Part shown: positions 6,955-57,700 of the stretch, piece after piece
Layout: every line of letters starts with the position of its first letter
How positions within the stretch are numbered: the stretch's first letter is position 1
DNA from: Mobula hypostoma
Lineage: Eukaryota
Direction of reading: 5' to 3'
Assembly: GCF_963921235.1 (NCBI RefSeq)
Contig: NW_026948187.1
Location: forward strand, 2,604,001 to 2,668,000
DNA: 64,000 bases
The notes under the pieces: model-generated
Databases searched by the model: none
Told to the model about the DNA's origin: nothing
The model's input: only the letters and a program-made list of their open reading frames with translations
Translations under genes and position numbers: made by a program

Positions 6955-7315
6955 GAATCATAGAAATCTACGGCACATTACAGACCCTTTGGCCCAAAAT
7001 GATGTGACGACCATGTAACTTACTCAAGAAACTGTCTAGAATTACCCTACCGCATAGCCCTCTATTTTCCTAATCTCCATGTACCTATCTAAGAGTCTCT
7101 TAAAATACCCTATTGTATCCGCCTCTACCACCGTCACTGGCAGTGCATTCCGCACACACACCACACTTTGTTTATAAAACTTAGCTCTTACTTCTCCTCT
7201 GTACCTACTTCCAAGCAACTTAAACCTATGCCCCCTCGTGTTAAACGTTTCAGTCCTGGGAAAAAGCCTCTGCCAATCCACACGGCCAATGCCTCTCATC
7301 ATCCTATACACCTGC
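6955..7315 (-). mobile_element. CR1 LINE 3' end
   Basis: ORF 7042-7365: VYRMMRGIGRVD..LFP...TRGH...FKRLLDRYM. Confidence 0.85.
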
Positions 7316-8139
7316 ATGAATTTCCTGCATGCTTCTCTCCAGGCTGAATAAGACGATGAGCACACTGTGGTTTTAACGTTCTTCAGGGCTCTGGACTATG
7401 ATGGTTAAGCTCCTTCTTCCCTGCTCTTTTGAACGTTTTGTGTCATTTTCACTCATTTCAAAGGACTGTGCCTCAGACAGCTGGGTTGTTGCAATGCGCC
7501 TCTAAAGTCTGACAGCAGACTAGCGAGTGAATCTTCGATGGCGCAGAGTCTGAAACTAAGGAGTTGCCAGCCTGAATCAGGGCTTTGGGGCTCCAGAAAG
7601 AGATGGGAAATAGAGTTTACAAGGAGGAGGAGGGAGAGGAATCAGACCAGCAGGATGTGGCCACAAATTAATGATCAGAAACATTTTGAAACTGTTTGAT
7701 TGAAAAAAAAAGGTGGTTAATTTGTGCAAAATACTGGAGGAAAACAGATCAGGACACACATGTGGAGAGGAATAAATAGACAACGTTTAGGCCGAGTCCC
7801 TTCAGCATGCCTATACTTTGTACTCCTCTGCTTAGTTGCAGCCTGAACTGCAGAGTTCCTCCAGCATTTTGTGTGCATGTGTCTACATTTCCACCAACAG
7901 CAGAATCCCTTGTGTTTTATATCTGCATTTGTAAGAAGGTTCTACTTCGGCATTAAACACGCGGAAAGTTTGCTGATATTAAGTGCATTGTTTATGAAAG
8001 CTGCTTTCTACATTGAAAGAGCTGCTGAATTCCCCCCCCGTCCCAAAAAAAAACTGAGGTGTGGACATGGAACCGGTGCTTGCAGAAATGTTTAATGGCA
8101 CCGTGATTACCCAGAAAGCTCTGCGTAAGATTTTTCGCT

Positions 8140-8480
8140 GTCGCTGAAGCGCCGATCGAATGCGCATGCGTCAGGGTTGCGGATTGTCCCGAATAACGCG
8201 CATGCGCGCAGTACATAAAGGCCTCGGAAAATCGGCTCCAGGTAGGAGATATTCCCCGGTTGCGGGATTGGGGACAATCGCTGTGAGCTCCGGACACCGT
8301 GGCCCGCAATCCCGGGACGCTCCTGCTCTCTTCCCTGTCTCTCAGACCCACGATCCGTCCACGGGCCCCGGGGAGCTTCCGGCTGATGAGGGAATGGGAA
8401 CCGATGGATCTCTCAGACAGAGCTGAGCTCCAGCTGTCTAAATGCAAGGATTGGGAACTCGGAGAAAGGGAACAAAATCT
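8140..8480 (+). promoter_or_regulatory. CpG promoter / 5' region of ZNF gene 1
   Basis: NRF1-like tgcgcatgcg (8161) and cgcgcatgcgcgca (about 8198), ETS-like cttccgg (about 8376), possible donor cag|gtagga at about 8242. Present upstream of all three ZNF arrays in matching orientation. Confidence 0.7.
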
Positions 8481-8799
8481 TTTACATCAGCTGTTGGAGA
8501 AAATTACCTTTGTTCTGCCTCCAGTCACAAACAAGAGATAATCTGCAGATGTTGAAAATCCAAGCAACACACACAAAATGCTGGAGGAACTCAGCATTAG
8601 TACTCTTTTCCATAGATGCTGCCTGGCCTGCTGATTATCCTCCAGCATTTTGTGTGTGTTGCTTGTTCTACCTCCTCTTGTTCTGGACCTTTCTCCCCGT
8701 GGGAACATGTTTTGACCCATTCTTTCTGAGTACATACTGATATCAAACACCTTTGTCCTGAGCAACAAGTGCCAGACTGCAATGAGACAGACCACTGCC

Positions 8800-9200
8800 C
8801 TTCCCTTCATATTCATTGGCCGTCAGTCACCTGGGGGAGGGTTCAGGGGAAATATTTATGTACAATACAGAAACTGGTGTTACCTGTGTGTATTGTGACG
8901 ATGCACAAATCGTTGGAGAATTTGTAAGTGGGAGGAAGTGGAGTGATATTTGGAAATCTGACTTTTTAAAGCATCATTTAGCAAGCAAATCAGATATGGA
9001 CGGTGTGCAAAAGCTGGAGTGAGAAAATCCTTCATAACCCTCTACAAGCCTGCTACGTAGATTGTGTGAGAGTGCAGATGAACTTGATCAAACCCAGACG
9101 ATATCAAAGTTCTTATTAACAGTGTTCTGCTAGCTGTTAAAATAAATACCTCTCTATTTAAAATTCAGTGTGCACATGTTGTTGTTACTGGGTAAAAATT
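8800..9200 (+). mobile_element. hAT-type transposase N-terminal fragment (TTF/ZNF862-like zinc finger); paralogues at about 26030-26420 and 56690-56990 (-)
   Basis: Translated GVTCVYC...DFLKHHLASK(S/P)H pattern. Confidence 0.5.
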
Positions 9201-9269
9201 GCACAGCACAAGATTTTTCAGCACACTGGTCATTACAAATTAGAGAGGACATTGGTGGGAAGGTGGGGA

Positions 9270-11340
9270 GACCTCCAGTGGCCCTGATGCCCTCACCTGC
9301 AAGATGTGCATCCAGCTGCAGCTTGTAACCCCGCACTTTAAGGAGCTGGATCTGGAAATGGATGAATTCCATATCATCCAGGAGTTGGATGGGGTGATAG
9401 ATATGACATAAAGACAGGTGATTTAAACCAAAATGCAGGACAGAAGAAACTGGGTGACAGTCAGGTAGGGGAATGAGGTTAAATAGTCATCGCAGAGTAC
9501 TCCTGTGGTCATTCCACACAACAACAGGTAGACCACTTCAGACACAGTTATGGAGGATTACCTAGCAGAGGAATGTCAAAAGGTTGATAGGGGATTTGTT
9601 AGTTAGGGAATTAAAACTATCAGAGATCTAATATCCTAGTGGTAAGGCTTGCTAATGCTAGTGTGTGGTGCGGGAGGGTGGAGGTTAAACTCAAGTTGCA
9701 GGGGGAATTGCAGTCAGAATGCCAGAACAGATAGGAAGGAGGTCCCAGTGCAGGAAGTTACATTAGACAGCCTGAATGTTTTTTCACCATTGACTAGCTG
9801 GGCCCCTGTTTCTGTACTGAACTTCTCCAAGTTTGGATACTGTTGGTGTGGACGACCTACCAGAGACAAGTTGTAGTGGTTGAGTGTCTGACACTGAGAC
9901 TGGACACTCAGCTCAGAAAGGAAGGAGTGAAAAGAGGAGAGCAGTAGTGATAGGGGATTTGATGCTATGGCATGAGTTGGTGAGGAAGGACAGGCAGGGG
10001 ACAAAACATTAATGTAGCCAGTTAAAGGGGTTGAAGTCTGTCTATTTCAATGCTAGGAGTGTTAGGCATAAAGGGGATGAACTTGGAGCATGGATCAGTA
10101 CATGGAACGATGACGTTGTGGCCGTTACTGAAACTTGGCTGGAGGAAGGGCAGGATCGGCTGATGCAGGTACCGGGGTTTAGGTGTTTTATAAGGAATAG
10201 GATGGGAGGTAGAAAAGGCAGGGGAGTAGCATTACTGGTCAGGGATAGTATCGCATCTATAGAGAGGGAGGATGCTGCAGAGGGAGTGCCCACTGAGTCG
10301 GTGTGGGTGGAAGTCAGAAATAGGAGGGGATCAATCACTGTGCTGGGAGTAGTCTATAGGCCCCCAAATAGCCCTTGGGACACCGAGGAGCAGATAAGCA
10401 GACAGAGTTTAGAATGGTGCAGATTTGTAGTTATGGGTGATTTCAACTTCCCTCGTATTGACTGGCACCTCCTGACTGCAAGGGGGAGAGGTGGGGCTGA
10501 ATTTGTCAGGTGCATTCAAGAAGGATTCCTGACACAGTATGTGGACCGGCCGATGAGAGGAGAGGCCATACTAGATCTAGTTCTGGGTAATGAACCTGGT
10601 CAGGTGGCAGACCTCTTGGTGAGGGAGCATTTTGGTGAGTGACCACAACTCCCTTAGCTTCAGCATAGCTATGGAAAAGGATAAAAACAGACAAAATGGG
10701 AAAGTGCTTAACTGGGGAAGGACTAACTATGAAGGGATGAGGCAGGAACTAGCGAGAGTAAATTGGAAACAGATGTTCAAGGGTGAAAGCACAGCAGTAA
10801 TGTGGAGGAAGTGTAGGGACCACTTGTGCTGGGTTCAGGATAGGTTTTGTCCCACTGAGACAAGGAAAAAATGGGAGGAAAAGGGAACCGTGGCTGACGA
10901 AACACATGAGGCAACTCATCAAGAGGAGGAAGGAAGCATATGTTAGATATAAGAAGCAGGAAGCAGGAGGGGCTCGTGAGAAATATAGGGTAGCCAGGAA
11001 GGAGCTTAAGGACTTAGGAGAGCTCGAAGGGGGCATGAGAAGGCCTTGGCATGTGGGATTAAGGAGAACCCCAAGGCGTTTCATGCGAATGTGAAGAACA
11101 GAAGGATGGCAAGAATGAAGGTGGGGCTGCTAAAGGATAAAGAAGACAACATGTGCCTGGAGATGGGGGAGGTTGGGGAGGTCCTAAATGAATACTTTGC
11201 TTCAGTATTTACAATTGAAAAGGATCTTGATCAGAGTGAGTTCTAGATAGAACAGGCCTGTGTGCTGGGCAAGGTGGAGATTAAGGAAGAAGAAGTGTTG
11301 GATCTTCTTAAAAGCATCAGTAAAGAGCTTTACCAAATGT
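9270..11340 (+). mobile_element. Degenerate CR1 LINE (ORF1 remnants + APE endonuclease part of ORF2)
   Basis: ORF 10031-10642: YFNARS...ETWL...YRPP...GDFN...LDL, followed by SDH. Frameshifted. Confidence 0.9.
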
Positions 11341-11624
11341 TCCCTTTAAATTTTCACTTCCCCACTTACCCATGACCTCTGGTTGTCTGTCATCCCACCC
11401 AACCTCAGTGGAAAAAGCTGCTTGCATTTACTCTATCTATACCCTCATAATTTTGTATACTTCTAACAAATCCTCAAAGCAATGTATAATTTCCTTGTTT
11501 ATGTTTAGAATCTTTTTTAGATGTATGAGATGATGAGGGGCATTGGTAGTGTAGATAGCCAGAGGTCTTTTTTTTCCCCAGGGCTGAAGTGGCTAACACA
11601 AGGGGGCATAGTTTTAAGGTGCTT

Positions 11625-11980
11625 TGAAATACTTTATTGTTGCCAAACAATTGGAACTAGAACGTACAATCATCACAGCGATATTTGATTCTGCGCTTCA
11701 CTCTCCCTGGATTACAAATATTAAATATTAAATATAGTTAAAATTAGTAAATATTAAAACTTTAAATTATAAATCATAAATAGAAAATAGAAAAATGGAA
11801 AGTAACGTAGTGCAAAAAAACCGAGAGGCAGGTCCAGATAATTGGAGGGTACGGCCCAGATCCAGGTCAGGATCTGTTCGGCAGTCTTATCATAATTGGA
11901 AAGAAGCTGCTCCCAAACCTGGCCATAGAAGTCTTCAAACTCCTGAATCTTCTTCTGGAGGGAAGAGAGACAAAAAGTCT
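11625..11980 (-). mobile_element. Rex/Babar-like LINE 3' end inserted into a CR1 fragment (absent from unit 2)
   Basis: Reverse complement encodes an LPSRRRFRSLKT..ARFGSSFFP-like end. Empty site at about 29270. Confidence 0.6.
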
Positions 11981-12706
11981 ACCGAGGGGATGTCAAGGGT
12001 AAGTTTTTTACACAGAGAGTGGTGGGTGTGTGGAATACACTGCCGGCTATTTGTGTGAGAGTGTTTCAGTTACTGTGGGGCCAGGAACCCATGCAGCTCA
12101 GTGGGAACAGGGAATAATACCAATGGAGAGAGTCAAACTGAGCCAGGTCACAGACTGGAGATGGCAGAAATGTCCCATTCTTATAGAGACAGGAAGAGCA
12201 TCAGAGAGTTTGATGGTCATTCCAGATACCAGCACTGTGCCCAGTTAGAAGATGATTTCTCTCTCCAACTTGGGTTGAACTTCACTGTAACAGTGTGATG
12301 TCAGATCACACCTTGACAACTCAAGTGATCTCATCTGAAATGTTGTCCTACACCCATTGATGGATTTTGTAACTCTTTTTACAGGTTAAAAATGACAAGG
12401 AATTTGTCTACGGAAGTCTAGAATACAACACACCAGTTTTGCTGTCTCTGTCCAGATATTTAAGAAGTGGAGCAAAGGATTCACTCAATCATCCTTCCTG
12501 CTCAGACAGTGGGAATGGATTCAGTCGGTCGTTTCAACTGAAGGTACATCAGCAAGTTCACACTGGAAAGGCCATTCATCTGTTCTGTATGTGAGAAGGG
12601 ATTCAGTCAGTCTTCCCACCAGTGGACACACCAGTCAGTTCTCACTGGGCAGAGGCTGGTCATCTGCTGAATTTGTGGGGTAGGATTCACTCGGTCATCT
12701 GACCTA

Positions 12707-13882
12707 ATGGCTCACCAGCGAGTTCACACCAGGAAGCAGCCATTCACCTGCTCAGACTGTGGGAAGGGATTCACTTACCCATCTAAACTGAAGGTACATC
12801 AGCAAATTCACACTGGGGAGAGGCCGTTCACCTGCTCAGACTGTGGGAAGGGATTCACTCGGTCATCTTACCTAATGGTACACCAGCGAATTCACACAGG
12901 ACAGTGGCCGTTCTCCTGCTCAGATTGTGGGAAGGGATTCACTTGGTCATCTCAACTGAAGGTACATCATCGACTTCACACTGGTGAGAGGCCGTTCACC
13001 TGCTCAGACTGTGGGAAGGGATTCACTTCGTCATCTCAACTGAAGGTTCATCAGCGAGTTCACACTGGAGAGAGGCCATTCACCTGCTCAGCCTGTGGGA
13101 TGGGATTCACTCAGTCATCTGAACTAATGGCTCACCAGCGAGTTCACACTGGGGAGCGGCCATTCACCTGCTTGGACTGTGGGAAGGGATTCACTTGCTC
13201 ATCTCACCTGAAGGTACATCAACGAGTTCACACCGGGGAACGGCCATTCACCTGCTCAGACTGTGGGAAGAGATTCACTATGTCATCTGATCTACTGAAA
13301 CACCAGTCAGTTCACACCAGAGAGAGGCCATTCACCTGCTCAGACTGTGGGAAGGGGTTCACTCGGTCATCTTACCTAATGGTACACCAGCGAATTCACA
13401 CTGGACAGTGGCCGTTCTCCTGCTCAGATTGTGGGAAGGGATTCACTTGGTCATCTCAACTGAAGGTACATCAGCGACTTCACACTGGTGAGAGGCCATT
13501 CACCTGCTCAGACTGTGGGAAGGGATTCACTCTATCATCTCATCTGAAGGAACATCAGCGAGTTCATACTGGAGAGAGGCCATTCACCTGCTCAGACTGC
13601 GGGAAGGGATTCGCTTCGTCATCTCCACTGAAGGTACATCAGCGACTTCACACTGGCGAGAGGCCATTCACCTGCTCAGTGTGTGGGAAGAGATTCACTT
13701 TGTCAACTGATCTACTGAGACACCAGTCAGTTCACACCAGAGAGTGGCCATTCACCTGCTCAGACTGTGGGAAGGGATTCACTTCGTCATCTAATCTGAA
13801 GGTACACCAGCGAGTTCACACTGGGGAGAGGCATTTTTCTGCTCAGACTGTGAGAAGGGATTCACATCGACATCTAAAGTGA
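12707..13882 (+). CDS. Tandem C2H2 zinc-finger protein, 13 complete fingers, no KRAB/SCAN/BTB domain
   Basis: Repeated CxxCGKGFxxxSxLxxHxxxH with TGERPF linkers. Degenerate fingers on both sides. Candidate acceptor ttttacag at about 12384 and AATAAA at 14830. Confidence 0.9.
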
Positions 13883-16490: not shown

Positions 16491-16699
16491 TTTCTATTTT
16501 CTCTGCTTGTTAATATTCCAGATACCTCTGTATCAAGTGATCTGATGAAGGGTCTTGGCCCAAAATTTTGATTCCCAACCTTAGATGCTGCCTGACCTGC
16601 TGATCTCCTCCAGCACATTGTGTGTATTGCTCTAGATTCCCAGCACCTGCAGGGTCTCATGTGTCCCATATACTTGTATGTTTCTTGAATAGGACACAC

Positions 16700-23269: not shown

Positions 23270-23862
23270 TTCCAGTGGCCACACATTTTAATTCCACCTC
23301 CCATTCCCATTCTGATATGTCTATCCACGGCCTTCTCTACTGTCAAGATGAAGCCACACTCAGGTTGCAGGAACAACACCTTATATTCCGTCTGGGTAGC
23401 CTCCAACCCTATGGCATGTATATTGACCACTCTAACTTCCGTTCATGCTCCTCTTCCCCTTCACACCCCATCCGTTATTTATGTTTTTAAAATATATTTG
23501 TTATTTTCCCCCTTTTTTCTCTCTCTCGTTTTTCTCCCTCTCACTATAACTCCTTACCTGCTCTCCACCCTCCGGGCTCCCCTCCCGCCTTCTCTCTCCC
23601 CAGGCTTCCCCTCCCAAGATCCTCTCCCTCCTCCAGCCTCGTATCCCTTTTGCCAATCAACTTTCCAGCTCTTTGATTCACCCCTCCCCTCCTGTCTTCT
23701 CCTGTCATTTTGGATCTTCCCTCTCTCCCTCCTACTTTCAAATCTCTTACTATCTCTTCTTTCAGTTTCTCCTGACGAAGGTCTCGGCCCGAAACGTCGA
23801 CTGTACCTCTTCCTATAGATTCTGCCTGGCCTGCTGCGTTCCACCAGCGTTTTTTGTGTGTG
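23270..23862 (+). mobile_element. Penelope-like element 3' end: GIY-YIG endonuclease C-terminus, pyrimidine-rich UTR and terminal repeat
   Basis: PVATHFNSTSHSHSDMSIHGL...EQHLIFRLGSLQPYGMYID is typical of PLE ORF ends. Hammerhead-like core at 23772-23803. Confidence 0.85.
23768..23803 (+). ncRNA. Minimal type I hammerhead ribozyme-like motif (Penelope-associated)
   Basis: CTGACGA-a-GG tctcggc CC-GAAAC-GTC|GACTG. Core boxes intact, stem I partly mismatched in this copy. Confidence 0.6.
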
Positions 23863-23929
23863 TTTCTTGTTCCTCCGAAATGTTTTCAGCTGTGAAATTG
23901 TTTTTATCAGAAATAACCATGGAGACTGA

Positions 23930-24460: not shown

Positions 24461-25339
24461 TCAGTCCTGGGAAAAGCCTCTAGCTATCCACACGACCAAT
24501 GCCTCTCATCATCTTGTACACCTGTATAAATTTCCTGCATGATTTTCTCCAGACGGAATTAGACGATGAGCTCACTGTGGTTTTCACGTTCTTCAGGCCT
24601 CCGGACTAAAGTGGTTAAACACTTCCTTCCCTGCTCTTTTCAACTTTTGGTGTCATTTTCACTAATTTCAAAGGACTGTGCCTCAGACAGCTGAGTTGTT
24701 GTAATGCATCTCTAAAGTTTGACAGCAGACAAGTGAGTGAATCTTCGATGGAGCAGAGTCAGAAACCAAAGAGTTACCAGCCTGAGTCAGGGGTTTGGGG
24801 CTCCGGAAAGAGCTGGGAACTAGAGTTTACAAGGAGGAGGAGGAAGAGGAATCAGATCAGCAGGATGCGGCTAAAAATGAAAGATCAAAAACATTTGGAA
24901 ACTGGTTGATCGAAAAATGTGGTTAATTTCTGCAAAATACCGGTGGAAATCAACAGATCAGGCGGTCAATGTGGAGAAGAATAAATAGACAACGTGTAGG
25001 CCGAGCCCCTTCAGCATGCATTGGCTGTGTGATCCTCTGCTTAGTTGCTGCCTGAACTGCAGAGTTCCTCCAGCAGTTTATGTGTATGTGTCTACATCTC
25101 CAGCAAAAGCAGAATCTCTTGTGTTTTATATCTGCATTTGTAAGAATGTTCTACTTTGGCATTAAACACGCGGAAAGTTTGCTGATATTAAGTGTATTGT
25201 TTTATGGGAGCTGCTTTCTGCGTTAAAAGAGGTGCTGAGTTTTCTACACAAAAAGAAAATGAGGTATGTACTTGAACCGGTGCTTGCAGAAACTTTCAAT
25301 GGCACCGGGATTAACTTGAAAGCTCTTTAACAATTCTCG

Positions 25340-25690
25340 CTGTCGCTCAAGCACCGACCGAATGCGCAGGCGTCAGGGTTGCGGCTGGTCCGAATATCAC
25401 GCATGCGCAGTACACAAAGGGCCTCGGATATCGCTGCCGGTGAGTGTTTCTCCGTGAGACCGTTTTCACTACCGACTGAGGGGCAATTGCTGTGACTCCG
25501 GAAACTGTGACCCGCAATCCCGGGATAGTCCTGTTTTCTTCCCTCTCTCTTAGCCCCACGATCCCTGCACGGACCCCGGGGAGCTTCCGGCTGATGAGGG
25601 AATGGGAACCGATGGATCTCTCAGACAGAGCTGAGCTCCAGCTGTCTAAATGCAAGGATTGGGAACTCGGAGAAAGGGAACAAAATATTT
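25340..25690 (+). promoter_or_regulatory. CpG promoter / 5' region of ZNF gene 2
   Basis: tgcgcaggcg and cgcatgcgca NRF1-like sites, candidate donor ccg|gtgagt at 25440, and the invariant block 25574-25686. Confidence 0.7.
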
Positions 25691-26974
25691 TACATCAGCT
25701 GTTGAGAAAATCACCTCCAATCACAAACGAGAAAATCTGCAGATGATGGAAATCCAAGCAACACACACAAAATGCCGGAATTCAGCATTAGTTCACTTTT
25801 CCATAGATGCTGCCTGGCCTGCTGAGCTCCTGAAGCATTTTGTGTGTGTTGCTTGTTCTACCTCCTCTTGCTCTGCACCTTTCTACCCGTGAGGACATGT
25901 TTTGACCCATTCACTCTGTGAAGATAATGATATCAAACACCTTTGCCCTGGGCAACAAATAGCTTTCACATCACAAATGTGCCAGACTCCAGTGGGACAG
26001 AATACTGCGTTTCCCTTTATATTCATTGGCATTGCCATCAATGAGTTCACCACAGTCAGTCACCTGGGGGAGGGTTCAGGGGAAATACTTATGTACATTA
26101 CAGAAACTGGTGTTACCTGTGTGTATTGCGGTGATGCAAAAGTTGCTGGAGAATTTGCAAGTGGGAAGAAGTGGAGTGATATTTTGAAATCTGACTTTTT
26201 AAAGAATAATTTAGCAAGCAAACCACATATGGACAATGTGCAAAAGCTCTGGTGAGAAAATCCTTCATTACCTGTTACAAGCCTGCTACATAGGTTGTGT
26301 GAGAGTGTAGATGAACTTGATCATACCCAGATGAGATTACAGTTCCTATGGACAGTGATTTGCTAGTTGTTAAAATGAATACCTCTCCTATATAAATTTA
26401 CTGTGAACATCTTGTCACTGGGTAAAAAATGCACAGTACAAGATTAATGTGCACACTGGTCATTACAAGTTAGAGGGGACATTGGTGGGAAGGTGGGGAG
26501 ACCTCCAGTGTCCCTGATGCCCTCACCTACAAGATGTGCATCCAGCTGCAGCTTGTAATCCTGCACTCAAGGAGTTGAACTTGAAATGGATGAATTCCCG
26601 ATCATCCAGGAGTTGGAGGGGTGATAGATATGACATGAAGAGAGGTGAGTTACACCCAAGGTGCAGGACACCGGAAACTGGGTGAGAGTCAGGAAGGGGA
26701 ATGAGGTTAAATAGCCATCGCAGAGAACTCTTGTTGCTATCCCGCACAACAGGTGGACCACTTTAGAAAATGGTGGCGGGGGGATTACCTGGCAGAGGAA
26801 AGTCAAAGGGGTGACAGGGGATTCATTAGTTAGGGGAACAGAACAAGAGGGGACTAATATCCTAGTGCAGGGGTAAGACTTGCTCGTGCTATTTTGGGGG
26901 GAGAGGTGATGTGGTTGAAATAAGTTGTAGGGGGAATGGGAGCCCAAATGACAGAACAGATACTGGAGAAGGTG

Positions 26975-27735: not shown

Positions 27736-30043
27736 GTCAGATGTTGTTCAGACCTCAGATAGAGTCAGCAATCAAATGATTGAGCATGGTGCGATGAATG
27801 TGCTGAGCTGTGTATATCACAATGCAAGAAGCATCGTAGGAATGCCGGATGAGCTCAGGATAGGGAATTATGATGTTGTAGCCATTATTGGGACTTGGTT
27901 GTACACAACAGTCTGAGGGATTTAGAGGAACAAATTTGTAGAGAGATCGCAGAGCATGCCAATAAACAAAGGTTGATTCAGTAACTGATTTTAATTTTCC
28001 ATATATTGACTGGGACTCCCATACTGTAAAAGGACTAAATGGGGTAGAGTTTGTCAAATGTGCCCTTAATCAGTACGTAGAATTCCCGACGTAGAAGTGT
28101 GCAATAAACTGTTAGGAAATGATCCAGGGCTGGAGACAGAAATCAGTGACTTTGGACCACGGGTTGAGATTCTAAATTGGGGAAAGGTCAATTTTGATGG
28201 TATCAGAAAGGATCTGACAAGTGTGGTTTTGGGCAGGCTGTTTTCTGGCAAAGGAGTACTTGGTAAGTGGGAGGCCTTCAGAAGTGAAAGTTTGAGGGTG
28301 TAGAGTTTGTATGAGCCTGCAAAAATAAAAGTTGAAAGGTAACTGGTGCAGGGAACCTTGGTTTTCAAGAGATATTGAGACCCCGGATATTTTGTTCCTC
28401 TAAATGCCTCAGACTGTTGGGTGCTACCAAGACTCATTAATGACTACAATATCATCATTTCATGCCCTGAGCTCATCCGACTTTTTTTTTTAGTGGTCTT
28501 CAGTAGGTTTCTAAAAGTTTCCCAATAGATTTTGCTCTTTTGTTTGCCCTCTCTTTGGCTTTGATGTTGGCTTTGGTTTCTCATTTCAGCCACGGTTGTG
28601 TCCTCCTGCCTTTCCACTGCTTCCACTTCTTTGGGATGTATCGATCACTCAGCTCCCGAATTGCTCCCAGAAACTCCAGACATTGCTGCTCCATTGTCAC
28701 TCCTATCTTTCCCTTCCAAACAAGTTTGGCCAGCTTCTCTGTCATAGAAACATGGAGAAGTTCAGTAAGGAAACAGGCTATTTGGCCCATCTAGTCAATG
28801 CCAAAAAAAACATTTAAGCTGTCTAATGCACCAATCTGCACTGGGACTATCACCCTCCATACCCCTGCCATCCAGACCCCCATCTGAACTTCTTTGAAAT
28901 GGTGAAACTGAGCTCATATTCACCACTTGTGCTGGCATCTCATTCCACACTCTCACGGCCATTTCAGTAAACAGCTTTTCCACATGTTCCTGTTAAATTT
29001 TCACCTTCCCCACTTACCCATGACCTCTGGTTGTCATCCCACCCAATCTCCGTGGAAAAAGCTGCTTGCATTTACCCTATCTATACCCTCATAATTTTGT
29101 ATACTTCGAACAAATCCTCAAAGCAATGTATAACTTCCTTGATTATGTTTGGAGCCTTTTTTAGGTGTATAAGATGATGAGGGGCATTGATCGTGTGGAT
29201 AGCCAGAGTTTTTTTTTCCCCAGGGCTGAAATGGGTAACACAAGGGGGCATGGTTTTGAGGTATTTGGAAATAGATACCGAGGGGATGTCAAGGGTAAGT
29301 TTTTTACACAGAGAGTGGTGGGTGTGTGGAATGCACTGCCGACTATTTGTGTGAGAGTGTTTCAGATACTGTGGGGCCAGGAACCCCCCATGCAGCTCAG
29401 TGGGAACAGGGAATAATACCAGTGGAGAGAGTCAGACTGAGCCAGGTCACAGATTGGCTATGGCAGAAATGCCCCATTCATTCAGGAAGAGCATCAGAAT
29501 TTGATGGTCATTCCAGATACCAGCACTGTGCCCATTTAGAAGATGATTTCTCTCTCTAACTTGGGTTGAACCTCACAGTAACAGTGTGATATCAGTTCAC
29601 ACCTTGACAAATCAAGTGATCTCATCTGAAATGTTGTCCTATACCCATTGATCGGTTTTGTAAATCTTTTTTGCAGGTTAAAAATGACGAGGAATTTGTT
29701 TCCGGGAATCTCGAACACAACACACCAGTTTTGCTGTCTCTATCCAGACATTTAATAAGTGGAGCAAGAGATTCACTCGATCATCTGACCTGCTGGCATG
29801 CCTGTCATTTTACACAGGGGGGAACCCATTCATTTGCTCAGACAGTAGGAATGGATCAGTCGGTCATCTCCACTGAAGGTACATCAGCAAGTTCACACTG
29901 GGACAAGGACATTCACCTGTTTTGTGTGTGAGAAGGGATTCAGTCGGTCTTCCCACCTGTGGACACACCAGTCAGTTCACACTGGGCAGACGCTGGTTAT
30001 ATGCTGAATTTTTGGGGAAGGATTCACTCAGTCATGTGACCTA

Positions 30044-30997
30044 ATGGCACACCAGCGAGTTCACACTGGGGAGAGGCCGTTCACCTGCTCGGACTGTGGG
30101 AAGGGATTCACTCAGTCATCCCACCTGCTGAGACACCGGTCAGTTCACACAGGGGAGAGGATGTTCACTTGCTCTGACTGCGGGAAGGGATTCACGGAAT
30201 CATCTCAACTGAAGGTACATCAGCGAGCTCATACTGGGGAGAGGCCATTCACTTGCTCAGACTGTGGGAAGACCTTCACTCGGTCATCCCAACTGAAGAT
30301 ACATCAGCATGTTCACACCGGAGAGAGGCCGTTTACCTGCTCAGACTGTGGGAAGGGATTCTCTTTGTCATCTCAGTTACTGAGACACCAGTCAGTTCAC
30401 ACCGGAGAGTGGCCATTCACCTGCTCGGACTGTGGGAAGGGATTCACTAAATCTTCTCACCTACTGAGACACTGGTCAGTTCACACTGGGGAGAGGCCAT
30501 TCACCTGCTCAGACTGTGGGAAGGGATTCACTGAATTATCTCAACTGAAGGTACATCAGCGAGTTCACACTGGGGAGAGGCCATTCACCTGCTCAGACTG
30601 TGGGAAGGGATTCACTGAATTATCTCAACTGAAGGTACATCAGCGAGTTCACACTGGGGAGAGGCCATTCACCTGCTCAACCTGTGGGAAAGGATTCACT
30701 TCGTCATCTCATCTGAAGGTACATCAGCGAGTTCACACTGGGGAGAGGCCATTCACCTGCTCAGAGTGTGGGAAGGGGTTCACACAGTTAGCTAGCCTAC
30801 AAGCACACCAGTCAGTTCACACCAGGGAGAGGCCGTTCACCTGCTCAGACTGTGGGAAGGGATTCACTCGGTCATCTCGCCTACTGACACACCTGTCAGT
30901 TCACATTAGGGAGAGGCCATTCACCTGCTCAGTGTGTGGGAAGGGATTCACTCGGTCATCTCGCCTACAGAGACACCAGCAAGTTCACACTGGGTAG
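30044..30997 (+). CDS. Tandem C2H2 zinc-finger protein, 11 fingers, no effector domain
   Basis: C2H2 repeats with TGERPF linkers; fingers 6 and 7 identical. Candidate acceptor ttttgcag at about 29676 and AATAAA at 31723. Confidence 0.9.
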
Positions 30998-46759: not shown

Positions 46760-46912
46760 TAGGCCTGATGACCGAGTGAATCCTTCCCCAAAAATTCAGC
46801 AGATAACCAGCCTCTGCCCAGTGTGAACACACTGGTGTGTCCACAGCTAAGAAGACCGACTGAATCCCCTCTCACACACAGAACAGGTGAATGGCCTTGT
46901 CCCAGTGTGAAC

Positions 46913-47263: not shown

Positions 47264-48049
47264 TAGGCCTGATGACCGAGTGAATCCTTCCCCAAAAATT
47301 CAGCAGATAACCAGCCTCTGCCCAGTGTGAACACACTGGTGTGTCCACAGCTAAGAAGACTGACTGAATCCCCTCTCACACACAGAACAGGTGAATGGCC
47401 TTGTCCCAGTGTGAACTTACTGATGTAACTTCAGGTGAGATGACCGACTGAATCCATTCCCACTGTCTGAGCAGGTGATTGGCCCCTCCCCATGTGTAAA
47501 ATGACAGGCGTGCCAGTCGGTCAGATGACTGGGTGAATCCCTCCCCACAGTCTGAGCTGGAAGGATGATCGATTGAATCATTTGCTCCACTTCTTAAATG
47601 TCTGGACAGAGACAGAAAAACTGGCGTGTTGTGTTCAAGATTCCTGTAGACAAATTCCTTGTCATTTTTAACCTGTAAAGAGATTTATAAAATTCATCAA
47701 TGGGCGAAGGACAACAGTTCAGTTTAGTCACCAAGGTGTGATCTGAAATCACACTGTTACAGTGAGGGTCAACCTAAATTGGAGACGGAAATCATCTTCT
47801 AACTGGGCACAGTGCTGGTATCTGGAATTAAATGATATCTGGTATCTGGAATCAAACTCTCTGATGCTCTTCCTGTCGCTATATGAATGGGGCATCTCTG
47901 CCGTCTCCAATCTGTGACCTGGCTCAGTTTGACTCTCTCCATTGGTATTATTCCCTGTTCCCACTGAGCTGCATGGGTCATTGGCTCCACAGTAACTGAA
48001 ACACACTCACACAAATAGCCTTTGTTGACCCGCTGCTGGGATTTTCTTG

Positions 48050-57319: not shown

Positions 57320-57700
57320 TGTAAAAGATTTTGTTCCCTTTCTCCGAGTTCCCAATCCTTGCATTTAGACAGCTGGAGCTCAGCTCTGTCTGAGAGATCC
57401 ATCGGTTCCCATTCCCTCATCAGCCGGAAGCTCCCCGGGGCCCGTGTACGGAACCTGGGGCTGAGAGAGAGGGAAGAGAGCAGGACTGTACCGGGATTGC
57501 GGGCCACGGTGTCCGGAGCTCTCTGCAATTGTCCTGAATTCGGTGTTGAAATAAATCGCCCGGAGAGTTTTTCTTCCCTCCTGCCATTCCTCTGAAGTCT
57601 TTTGTGTACTGCGCGCATGCGTGATATTCGAAACGTCATCAATATTGACGCCTGCGCATATAATCGGTGCTTCAGAGACAGCGATAATTTTAACACAAGG
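57320..57700 (-). promoter_or_regulatory. CpG promoter / 5' region of ZNF gene 3
   Basis: Inverted paralogue of 8140-8480: NRF1-like tgcgcgcatgcg at about 57610 and invariant block 57328-57440. Confidence 0.7.

What the first reader, a model, noticed from the sequence alone, without database searches (positions are those of the whole stretch)
8366..8478. 113-bp block identical in all three ZNF promoter paralogues while its flanks are strongly diverged
Seen: 8366-8478 (+), 25574-25686 (+) and 57328-57440 (-) match base for base (ccccggggagcttccggctgatgagggaatggg...gaacaaaat). The 70 nt just upstream differ at about 12 positions between copies 1 and 2, and the finger arrays differ extensively. 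The block lies about 150-270 nt downstream of paired NRF1-like sites. It contains an ETS-like CTTCCGG, a hairpin (AGAC-AG-AGCTG/agctc/CAGCT-GTCT), a GGAGC...GCTCC pairing around TGATGA...CTGA, and an open frame MREWEPMDLSDRAELQLSKCKDWELGEREQN. Inference: the absence of even synonymous changes points to nucleotide-level constraint. Candidates are a family-wide cis element, a structured 5' leader or small RNA, or an uORF/effector exon that co-regulates this KRAB-less ZNF family. Localised gene conversion is the alternative. I do not recognise it as a described element, and it is the best candidate here for an undescribed system.
Basis: partly seen in the sequence, partly recalled or inferred. 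Interest (0 to 1): 0.82.

Follow-up and report, generated by a model that had tools for sequence, protein, structure and literature searches.

The report
Conserved leader exon of zinc-finger family
The 113-base block is the best-kept part of a non-coding first exon shared by several hundred zinc-finger genes of this (reportedly stingray) genome; it evolves about three times more slowly than its surroundings but is not invariant, so it is an ordinary conserved control or leader sequence, not a new system.

Summary
8366-8478(+), 25574-25686(+) and 57328-57440(-) are identical over 113 columns, and the next longest three-way identical run in the shared 1.2-kb module is 30.

The block is not a special feature of these three copies. 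It gives at least 270 candidate copies in the genome, always inside the same promoter / exon 1 / intron module.

One RNA-run contig joins about 8489 to about 12382. This fits a first exon spliced onto the zinc-finger exon about 3.9 kb downstream.

In 33 copies chosen by their flanks, the block differs from the canonical sequence at 0-9 of 113 sites. Its substitution rate is 2.4-3.8 times lower than that of the flanks, and its divergence rises with flank divergence.

The variants show no codon pattern. A TGG>TAG stop is found in a third of these copies, and some have lost the ATG. The exon-1 reading frame ends 11-25 codons into exon 2, before the zinc-finger ORF. There is no RNA-folding signal, no compensatory change and no Rfam match.

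The words of the canonical block also occur in runs labelled as other organisms.

Verdict: this is a nucleotide-level constrained 5' leader / promoter-proximal module of a KRAB-less ZNF family. The peptide and structured-RNA readings are not supported. Block-specific gene conversion is not supported, but it is not excluded.

The parts
8040..8260 (+). Shared promoter module of copy 1, with two GCGCATGCG (NRF1-like) palindromes at 8162 and 8198
   Evidence: 174 first-look candidates in the genome, the best at 81-87% identity. Motif positions. The function as a promoter is inferred.
8280..8492 (+). Exon 1 (non-coding leader) of ZNF gene copy 1. The 5' end is not mapped. The 3' end is set by the only GT nearby (8493).
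   Evidence: Contig depth of RNA-labelled runs rises from about 8220-8320 and peaks on 8383-8543. A contig of run X19 covers 8280-8489. An X1 contig joins 8489 to 12382.
8366..8478 (+). The 113-nt block: the conserved core of exon 1
   Evidence: identity of the three copies. (270 candidates, best 40 at 99-100%). (0.58-0.61 steps/site against 1.2-2.2 in the flanks).
8386..8492 (+). First AUG of the transcript and its open frame. It continues in phase 2 into exon 2 and stops after 11-25 codons, giving a uORF of 47-61 codons that is not under peptide selection.
   Evidence: No ATG in 8230-8385. Frames. Variant pattern.
8493..12384 (+). Intron 1 (GT...AG). It carries a MITE-like inverted repeat at 8546-8680 and a LINE endonuclease fragment from 10031.
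   Evidence: Joint. Weak miRNA-like Rfam hits on the inverted repeat. Exo_endo_phos hit at E 3.5e-14.
12385..12706 (+). Exon 2 leader: decayed, frame-shifted fingers with three more upstream ATGs and a TGA shared by all three copies
   Evidence: 574 candidates in the genome, the best at 92-94%.
12707..13882 (+). C2H2 zinc-finger ORF of copy 1 (391 aa, starts MAHQRVHT). The array continues, frame-shifted, to about 14200.
   Evidence: Pfam zf-C2H2 E 5e-83.
25574..25686 (+). Block of copy 2. Exon 2 starts at 29677 and the ZNF ORF is 30044-30997.
57328..57440 (-). Block of copy 3. Exon 2 starts at 47672 (minus strand) and the ZNF ORFs are 47263-46913 and 46759-45764.

Best explanation
The block is the conserved core of a non-coding first exon (5' leader). 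This exon is shared by a clustered, KRAB-less C2H2 zinc-finger family with at least 270 block copies and 574 exon-2 leader candidates. Each unit has the same layout. An NRF1-type promoter comes first, then exon 1 (about 210-245 nt, with the block at roughly +90 to +230). An intron of 3.9-9.6 kb follows, and then one large exon whose zinc-finger ORF begins only after about 320 nt of decayed fingers. The block is kept by purifying selection on the nucleotides themselves, at about one third of the flank rate. I think it most likely acts as a promoter-proximal platform of transcription-factor sites just downstream of the start site: ETS-like CTTCCGG, a CAGCTG E-box and three TGGGAAC-type repeats. 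Such a platform would give the whole family a common expression programme. Shown: the position, the copy number, the splice joint, the reduced rate, the lack of a coding signature and the lack of a structure signature. Inferred: that the cause is selection, and that it acts on DNA rather than on the transcribed leader.
For: Linkage to ZNF genes: in all three window copies the block lies 3.9-9.6 kb upstream of, and on the same strand as, a ZNF array. Elsewhere, block/promoter hits and exon-2 hits pair up 3.5-13.5 kb apart on the same strand on C180, C157, C9, C167 and C116.

Exon status: a depth step and the 8489>12382 joint.

Reduced rate in 33 flank-selected distinct copies: 0.58-0.61 Fitch steps/site, against 1.2-1.5 in the intron and 2.0-2.2 upstream, on trees built from the other flank.

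Vertical pattern: block divergence rises with flank divergence (0.016, 0.027, 0.027, 0.045, 0.066). Block distances correlate with the adjacent segments (0.40, 0.54) as well as the flank segments correlate with each other (0.39, 0.45). Homoplasy per allele-frequency class is the same as in the flanks.

The left edge of conservation is sharp and common to the copies, at about 8366. The right edge, at 8479-8495, lies before or at the donor.

Cross-species: DNA-labelled runs of organisms B, G, J and I and a skin metagenome hold 0.30-0.33 of the words of 8200-8560, which is about the block's share. Organism A holds 0.53-0.60. In four organisms no position of the block shows a majority difference, whereas 8319-8359 do.

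Not coding and not structured.
Against: The constraint is moderate, and a third of the copies carry the same 8453 G>A change. That change needs 6 steps on the flank tree and also sits in a 98%-identical recent duplicate of copy 1, L033. This points to a hotspot or to some conversion. For very recent duplicates the block is no better kept than the flanks (n=7).

Three canonical copies in one window are unlikely under one uniform reduced rate (my estimate is about 1e-5 to 1e-3). So either rates differ between live and dead copies, or local conversion helps.

The ETS core itself is hit in 6 of 33 copies.

No TSS data, no chromatin data and no motif library were available. The splice joint rests on one contig of a run whose RNA nature is only guessed, and that contig has one letter more than copy 1 predicts. 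The evolutionary distance of the other organisms is unknown.
Confidence: 0.42

Rival explanations
1. Same conserved leader, but the constraint acts on the RNA. The first 5' UTR exon would be a binding platform for a protein or a complementary RNA, and together with its uORF it would control translation or stability of all family mRNAs at once.
For: The block is transcribed. Conservation starts 20 nt before the first AUG of the transcript, and there is no ATG in 8230-8385. The main ORF lies behind five upstream AUGs, so translation must be regulated or inefficient. A contiguous ~110-nt constraint without a codon or structure signature fits base pairing with, or binding by, a trans factor.
Against: There is no fold stability, no compensatory change and no Rfam match. 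The AUGs are lost as often as other sites change (5 and 3 of 33). The 14 nt before the donor are less well conserved. There is nothing to pair with in the data at hand.
Confidence: 0.2
2. Concerted evolution. Ectopic gene conversion or unequal crossing-over between paralogues homogenises this stretch, without any function of its own.
For: Mosaic pairs exist, for example L031/L033 (upstream 2.5%, downstream 7.8%) and L037/L039 (12.5% against 2.6%). The common variants 8453A and 8436A are scattered over the flank tree, needing 6 and 5 steps. Block divergence has a non-zero floor for close pairs. The three window copies are neighbours in one cluster.
Against: The block's history is no more decoupled from its flanks than the flanks are from each other. 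Its divergence grows with flank divergence. The edges of identity coincide between unrelated pairs (8360-8366 and 8479-8495) instead of varying as conversion tracts would. The same canonical words are found in runs labelled as other organisms. The GC- and CpG-rich promoter next door, which I would expect to be the likelier recombination hotspot, is the least conserved part.
Confidence: 0.2
3. The block is, or recently was, a coding first exon. It would hold the start codon and about 36 residues of an N-terminal domain of the functional family members, and the copies studied here would be largely pseudogenes.
For: An open frame runs from the first AUG to the exon end in 38 of 59 distinct copies. 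The spliced X1 contig has one letter more than copy 1, which would put the frame into the open exon-2 frame 1 (69-100 codons open in all three copies). The analogy is the zebrafish FiNZ first exon (PMC10547256).
Against: There is no third-position excess (11/16/14), and synonymous changes are 21% against 18% expected by chance. The stop variant is common and some ATGs are lost. In all three canonical window copies the frame is phase 2 and stops early, and exon-2 frame 1 also stops before the ZNF ORF. phmmer against 1.84 billion representatives found only two spurious CRISPR-array translations. There is no Pfam match.
Confidence: 0.1
4. The block hosts a C/D-box-like small RNA (TGATGA ... CTGA flanked by GGAGC/GCTCC) or another processed small RNA.
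Against: The 5' stem arm is 6 nt away from the C box. The stem is broken in 5 cells and kept in 1, with no compensation. Conservation extends 50 nt beyond the D-like box. The position is exonic. There is no Rfam hit even at E<=1 and no fold signal.
Confidence: 0.03

Closest known systems
First exon of zebrafish FiNZ zinc-finger genes (Wells et al. 2023, PMC10547256)
   Same: Both are lineage-specific, clustered poly-ZNF families with hundreds of members whose first exon is nearly identical at the nucleotide level. In zebrafish one morpholino designed on the aligned first exons is predicted to hit 447 of 684 genes.
   Different: The FiNZ exon encodes the start codon and an N-terminal domain. 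Here the exon shows no coding signature and its frame is not joined to the fingers. There is no sequence similarity to any known protein.
Shared promoter architecture of zebrafish chromosome-4 znf genes (Hadzhiev et al., bioRxiv 10.1101/2021.08.09.455629)
   Same: A family of znf genes is co-activated because the paralogues share promoter features. The present block would be the analogous family-wide cis module.
   Different: The zebrafish feature is a TATA box with sharp initiation. Here the promoter is of the NRF1-palindrome/CpG-rich type and the conserved part is downstream of the start site. Co-expression is not shown here.
KRAB-ZNF clusters of tetrapods (5' exons better conserved than finger arrays; birth-and-death evolution)
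   Same: Tandem clusters with fast-changing finger arrays, a slow 5' part and many decayed copies.
   Different: There is no KRAB, SCAN or BTB domain (Pfam). The conserved 5' part is non-coding.
C/D box snoRNA
   Same: TGATGA and CTGA motifs with a 5-bp flanking complement.
   Different: Wrong spacing, exonic position, no covariation and no Rfam match.

Membership tests
Shared first exon of an expanded poly-ZNF gene family | Lies upstream of, and on the same strand as, a C2H2 array in each copy | tested here: met
   Three of three window copies. Coordinate pairs on five other contigs.
Shared first exon of an expanded poly-ZNF gene family | Is transcribed and spliced onto the finger exon | tested here: met
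   Depth step and the 8489>12382 joint in X1. This is a single contig, the run is only guessed to be RNA, and the exact junction is off by one letter.
Shared first exon of an expanded poly-ZNF gene family | More conserved among paralogues than intron and promoter | tested here: met
   0.58-0.61 against 1.2-2.2 steps/site
Coding N-terminal exon / conserved uORF peptide (FiNZ-like) | Excess of third-position and synonymous change; stops and frameshifts avoided | tested here: not met
   Codon positions 11/16/14; 10 synonymous: 36 non-synonymous: 1 stop; the stop is in 11 of 33 copies; gaps of 2, 3 and 8 nt
Coding N-terminal exon / conserved uORF peptide (FiNZ-like) | Frame continues into the zinc-finger ORF | tested here: not met
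   The phase-2 frame stops 11-25 codons into exon 2 in all three copies
Structured cis-RNA / Rfam family | Fold more stable than shuffles; compensatory changes; covariance-model match | tested here: not met
   z +0.22 / +1.37; 0 compensatory changes and 92 broken pairs; no Rfam hit on the block at E<=1
C/D box snoRNA | C and D boxes directly enclosed by a terminal stem; intronic host position; guide complementarity | tested here: not met
   6-nt offset of the stem, exonic position, stem not maintained. Guide targets were not tested.
Transposable element | Dispersed copies in unrelated contexts, with own termini | tested here: not met
   84 of 90 fetched loci carry the block inside the same promoter/intron module. 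Copies sit in a few clusters (C116, C9 at 204 Mb, C12 at 161 Mb, C58 at 77 Mb, small contigs).
Gene-conversion tract | History of the tract decoupled from its flanks; variable tract ends | tested here: inconclusive
   No extra decoupling or homoplasy relative to the flanks, and the ends are common to unrelated pairs. But there are mosaic pairs and a scattered 8453A variant.

The most novel reading that the evidence does not exclude
The block is a family-wide RNA 'handle'. This would be a ~110-nt unstructured leader kept identical so that one trans-acting factor can switch several hundred zinc-finger mRNAs on or off together, for example in the germ line or early embryo. The factor could be a complementary RNA or an RNA-binding protein. 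The handle would be conserved across batoid species.
Probability: 0.12. Interest if true: 0.6.

Novelty: new member of a known kind. Interest (0 to 1): 0.27.

Why it matters
The block gives a handle on a large ZNF family that, as far as my literature searches show, has not been described in the stingray. One probe, morpholino or guide against it would address many of its members at once: about a quarter of flank-selected copies differ from the canonical 113 nt at no more than one site. The zebrafish FiNZ first exon has been used in the same way. The block also marks where a reporter dissection of family-wide co-regulation should start. It does not reveal a new kind of element.

Tried and rejected
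1. phmmer of the exon-1 peptide against 1.84 billion representatives gave only two hits, and both are translations of CRISPR arrays.
2. Pfam found nothing for the exon-1 frame, the exon-2 leader or the conserved intron ORF 8816-9022.
3. A word-indexed protein search with the 391-aa ZNF ORF was swamped by generic ZNFs and said nothing about N-termini.
4. Exact look-ups of the copy 1 and copy 2 ZNF ORFs in public assemblies, meant to recover a spliced transcript, found nothing on record.
5. An exact 32-mer of the block in metagenome contigs gave 0 hits.
6. Family-wide analysis of exon 2 (acceptor, frame, ORF integrity against block state) could not be done.
7. Literature searches for a description of a stingray or elasmobranch ZNF leader found nothing relevant.
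8. The idea that the intron segment 8801-9020 is an independent TE (1455 candidates) was not resolved. Its best 30 copies almost all carry the block upstream.
9. The three earlier-findings searches that could have shown a previous note on this block found none.

Full report
**1. Observation**

The first 33 nt of the block occur exactly three times in the window, at 8366(+), 25574(+) and 57408-57440(-). None are expected in shuffles.

A three-way alignment of 1.6 kb around each copy has one invariant run of 113 columns, exactly 8366-8478. The next longest runs are 30, 19 and 19.

The flanks are 74-77% identical upstream and 81-87% downstream. The 70 nt upstream differ at 13, 8 and 12 positions between the pairs.

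**2. What surrounds the block**

The three copies share a 1.1-1.4-kb module (about 8044-9106 in all three; 7900-9298 between copies 1 and 2), and there are no further copies of it in the window. In copy 1 coordinates the layout is:
- a CpG-rich promoter with two GCGCATGCG palindromes at 8162 and 8198;
- the block;
- a MITE-like inverted repeat at 8546-8680, which gives only weak miRNA-like Rfam hits;
- about 500 nt of further shared sequence.

C2H2 arrays with an 84-nt period lie on the same strand, 3.9 kb (copies 1 and 2) and 9.6 kb (copy 3) downstream. Copies 1 and 2 are part of a 17.2-kb tandem duplication. The intron of copy 1 carries a LINE endonuclease fragment.

**3. Transcript evidence**

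Runs labelled with nine different organism codes, guessed to be RNA, hold about a third of the 31-mers of 8200-8560. That is about the block's share.

I laid contigs of four of these runs on 7900-12700. The results were:
- Depth is low before about 8220, rises through 8320-8360 and is highest on 8383-8543.
- A contig of run X19 covers 8280-8489.
- An X1 contig joins 8489 to 12382 with one extra letter.
- The only GT nearby is at 8493, and 12383-12384 is the AG of a ...tttttacag| acceptor conserved in all three copies.

I read this as exon 1 (about 8280-8492) spliced onto the large finger exon, which starts at 12385.

Caveats: this is one contig, the library type is not on record, and the junction has one letter more than copy 1 predicts. 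The contig therefore comes from a paralogue.

**4. Is exon 1 coding?**

There is no ATG in 8230-8385, so 8386 is the first AUG of the transcript. Its frame leaves exon 1 in phase 2 and stops 11-25 codons into exon 2 in all three copies.

The long finger ORFs all begin at the same internal ATG (MAHQRVHT...: 12707, 30044, 46759 and 47263). This ATG follows decayed, frame-shifted fingers and a TGA shared by all copies. Three further upstream ATGs lie in between.

Among 59 distinct family copies, variable sites fall 11/16/14 on the three codon positions. Variants are 10 synonymous, 36 non-synonymous and 1 stop, so synonymous changes make up 21% against 18% expected by chance. TGG>TAG is frequent, ATG is lost in several copies, and there are 2-, 3- and 8-nt gaps. 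The same three-way partition of sites serves all six frames, so no frame on either strand shows a coding signature.

phmmer of the 35-residue peptide against 1.84 billion representatives found only two CRISPR-array translations. Pfam found nothing. The peptide / effector-exon reading is therefore disfavoured.

**5. Is it a structured or small RNA?**

- The fold of 8366-8492 is no more stable than shuffles (z +0.22; reverse strand +1.37).
- On the MFE structure, family variants give 0 compensatory changes, 12 wobble-kept cells and 92 broken cells.
- GGAGC/GCTCC gives 5 broken cells against 1 kept.
- Rfam has no match on the block at E<=1.

**6. Family-wide conservation without ascertainment bias**

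The block itself gives 270 first-look candidates in the genome, and the best 40 are 99-100% identical. Those copies were chosen by the block, so they cannot be used to measure its rate.

I therefore fetched copies by the promoter (8040-8260; 174 candidates) and by the intron (8801-9020; 1455 candidates). In promoter-selected loci the block is 104-113/113 identical to copy 1. The promoter is about 84% identical and the intron about 88-90%.

Results for the 33 distinct flank-selected loci:
- Differences from the canonical block (number of differences: loci) are 0:4, 1:5, 2:7, 3:5, 4:6, 5:1, 6:3, 8:1, 9:1.
- Fitch steps per site are 0.58-0.61 for the block, 1.2-1.5 for the intron and 2.0-2.2 upstream. 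This holds also on trees built only from the opposite flank.
- The block is therefore 2.4-3.8 times slower than its flanks. It is not frozen.
- The least variable stretches are 8409-8428 and 8456-8476. The ETS core is hit in 6 of 33 copies.
- Conservation starts sharply at about 8366 and fades at 8479-8495, before or at the donor.

With about 27% of copies at no more than one difference, 40 of 40 best hits at 99% or above is what one expects.

**7. Selection or conversion?**

Evidence for vertical descent at a reduced rate:
- Block divergence rises with flank divergence (0.016, 0.027, 0.027, 0.045, 0.066 over five flank bins).
- Block distances correlate with the adjacent segments (0.40, 0.54) as well as flank segments correlate with each other (0.39, 0.45).
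- Homoplasy per allele-frequency class equals that of the flanks.
- The edges of identity coincide between unrelated pairs.

These results do not point to block-specific homogenisation.

Evidence that some ectopic exchange occurs in these units:
- A few pairs are mosaics.
- The 8453A variant is scattered over the tree. It also occurs in L033, whose upstream flank is 98% identical to copy 1.

Three canonical copies in one window are unlikely under one uniform reduced rate. My estimate is about 1e-5 to 1e-3, from a flank tree length of about 0.25 and a rate ratio of 0.26-0.4. Either the constraint differs between live and decaying copies, or local conversion contributes. The look-elsewhere effect of a scan over more than a thousand windows also applies.

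**8. Other organisms**

DNA-labelled runs of organism A hold 0.53-0.60 of the words of 8200-8560; it is probably the source species. Organisms B, G, J and I and a skin metagenome hold 0.30-0.33, which is about the block's share. Among the RNA-labelled runs the share falls from 0.33 to 0.13 across organisms.

In all four laid runs the majority letter equals the canonical block at every position. At 8319, 8320, 8337, 8346 and 8359 the majority differs from copy 1, so those are private changes of copy 1. That table is truncated, so minority variants cannot be excluded.

The identity and distance of these organisms are hidden from me. This supports persistence of the canonical sequence beyond one species, but it does not date it.

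**9. Conclusion and comparison**

The block is the conserved core of a non-coding leader exon of a large KRAB-less C2H2 family, under moderate nucleotide-level constraint.

The mechanism I commit to is a promoter-proximal cluster of factor-binding sites just downstream of the start site, which gives the paralogues a common expression programme (0.42). The rivals are:
- an RNA-level leader function (0.20);
- concerted evolution (0.20);
- a coding or formerly coding N-terminal exon (0.10);
- a small RNA (0.03).

The closest known cases are in zebrafish. The FiNZ-ZNF first exon is similar enough among paralogues for one morpholino to be predicted to hit 447 of 684 genes (PMC10547256). The chromosome-4 znf genes share a promoter architecture (10.1101/2021.08.09.455629). 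The present case differs in that the conserved exon is non-coding and has no sequence relatives. It is a new member of a known kind and of modest interest.

Noticed in passing
window 8546-8680 (also 16579-16631, 23803-23872): MITE-like inverted-repeat element in intron 1. It has very high contig depth in all four laid runs (6,000-140,000) and weak sub-threshold miRNA-precursor Rfam hits (mir-578, MIR6024).
   Followed up: partly
window 12640-12706, 29980-30043, 46760-46830(-), 47264-47330(-): All ZNF ORFs start at the same internal ATG (MAHQRVHT). The ATG follows a TGA that sits between the two cysteines of a decayed finger and is shared by all copies. The family seems to encode finger-only proteins behind a ~530-nt leader with five upstream AUGs.
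   Followed up: partly
window 8453 (and L033 = G000:C116:1400478-1403697): The G>A change (TGG>TAG in the exon-1 frame) is present in 11 of 33 flank-selected copies and needs 6 steps on the flank tree. It also occurs in a copy whose upstream flank is 98% identical to copy 1. T>C at 8452, next to it, is the commonest variant among the block-selected copies. This is either a mutation hotspot or ectopic conversion.
   Followed up: partly
window 8801-9020: This intron segment gives 1455 first-look candidates in the genome, five times more than the block (270) or the promoter (174). It contains a 68-codon open frame (8816-9022) with a C..C...H..H-like pattern and no Pfam match. It may be an older repeat built into the module.
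   Followed up: partly
window 7259-9300 vs 24469-26530: Copies 1 and 2 belong to a 17.2-kb tandem duplication at about 87-88% identity. Near-identical (98%) duplicates of the copy 1 unit lie about 209 kb and 1.2 Mb away on the same contig (C116:2402966 and C116:1401978).
   Followed up: no
window 10031-11250: LINE fragment (endonuclease domain, Exo_endo_phos E 3.5e-14, followed by RT-like frames) in intron 1 of copy 1. Contigs of all four organisms match the LINE consensus better than this copy does.
   Followed up: no
L034-L036 (G000:C96, 6.3-7.0 Mb): Three copies keep the promoter and only the first ~65 nt of the block. Homology then ends, so these are truncated or interrupted units.
   Followed up: no
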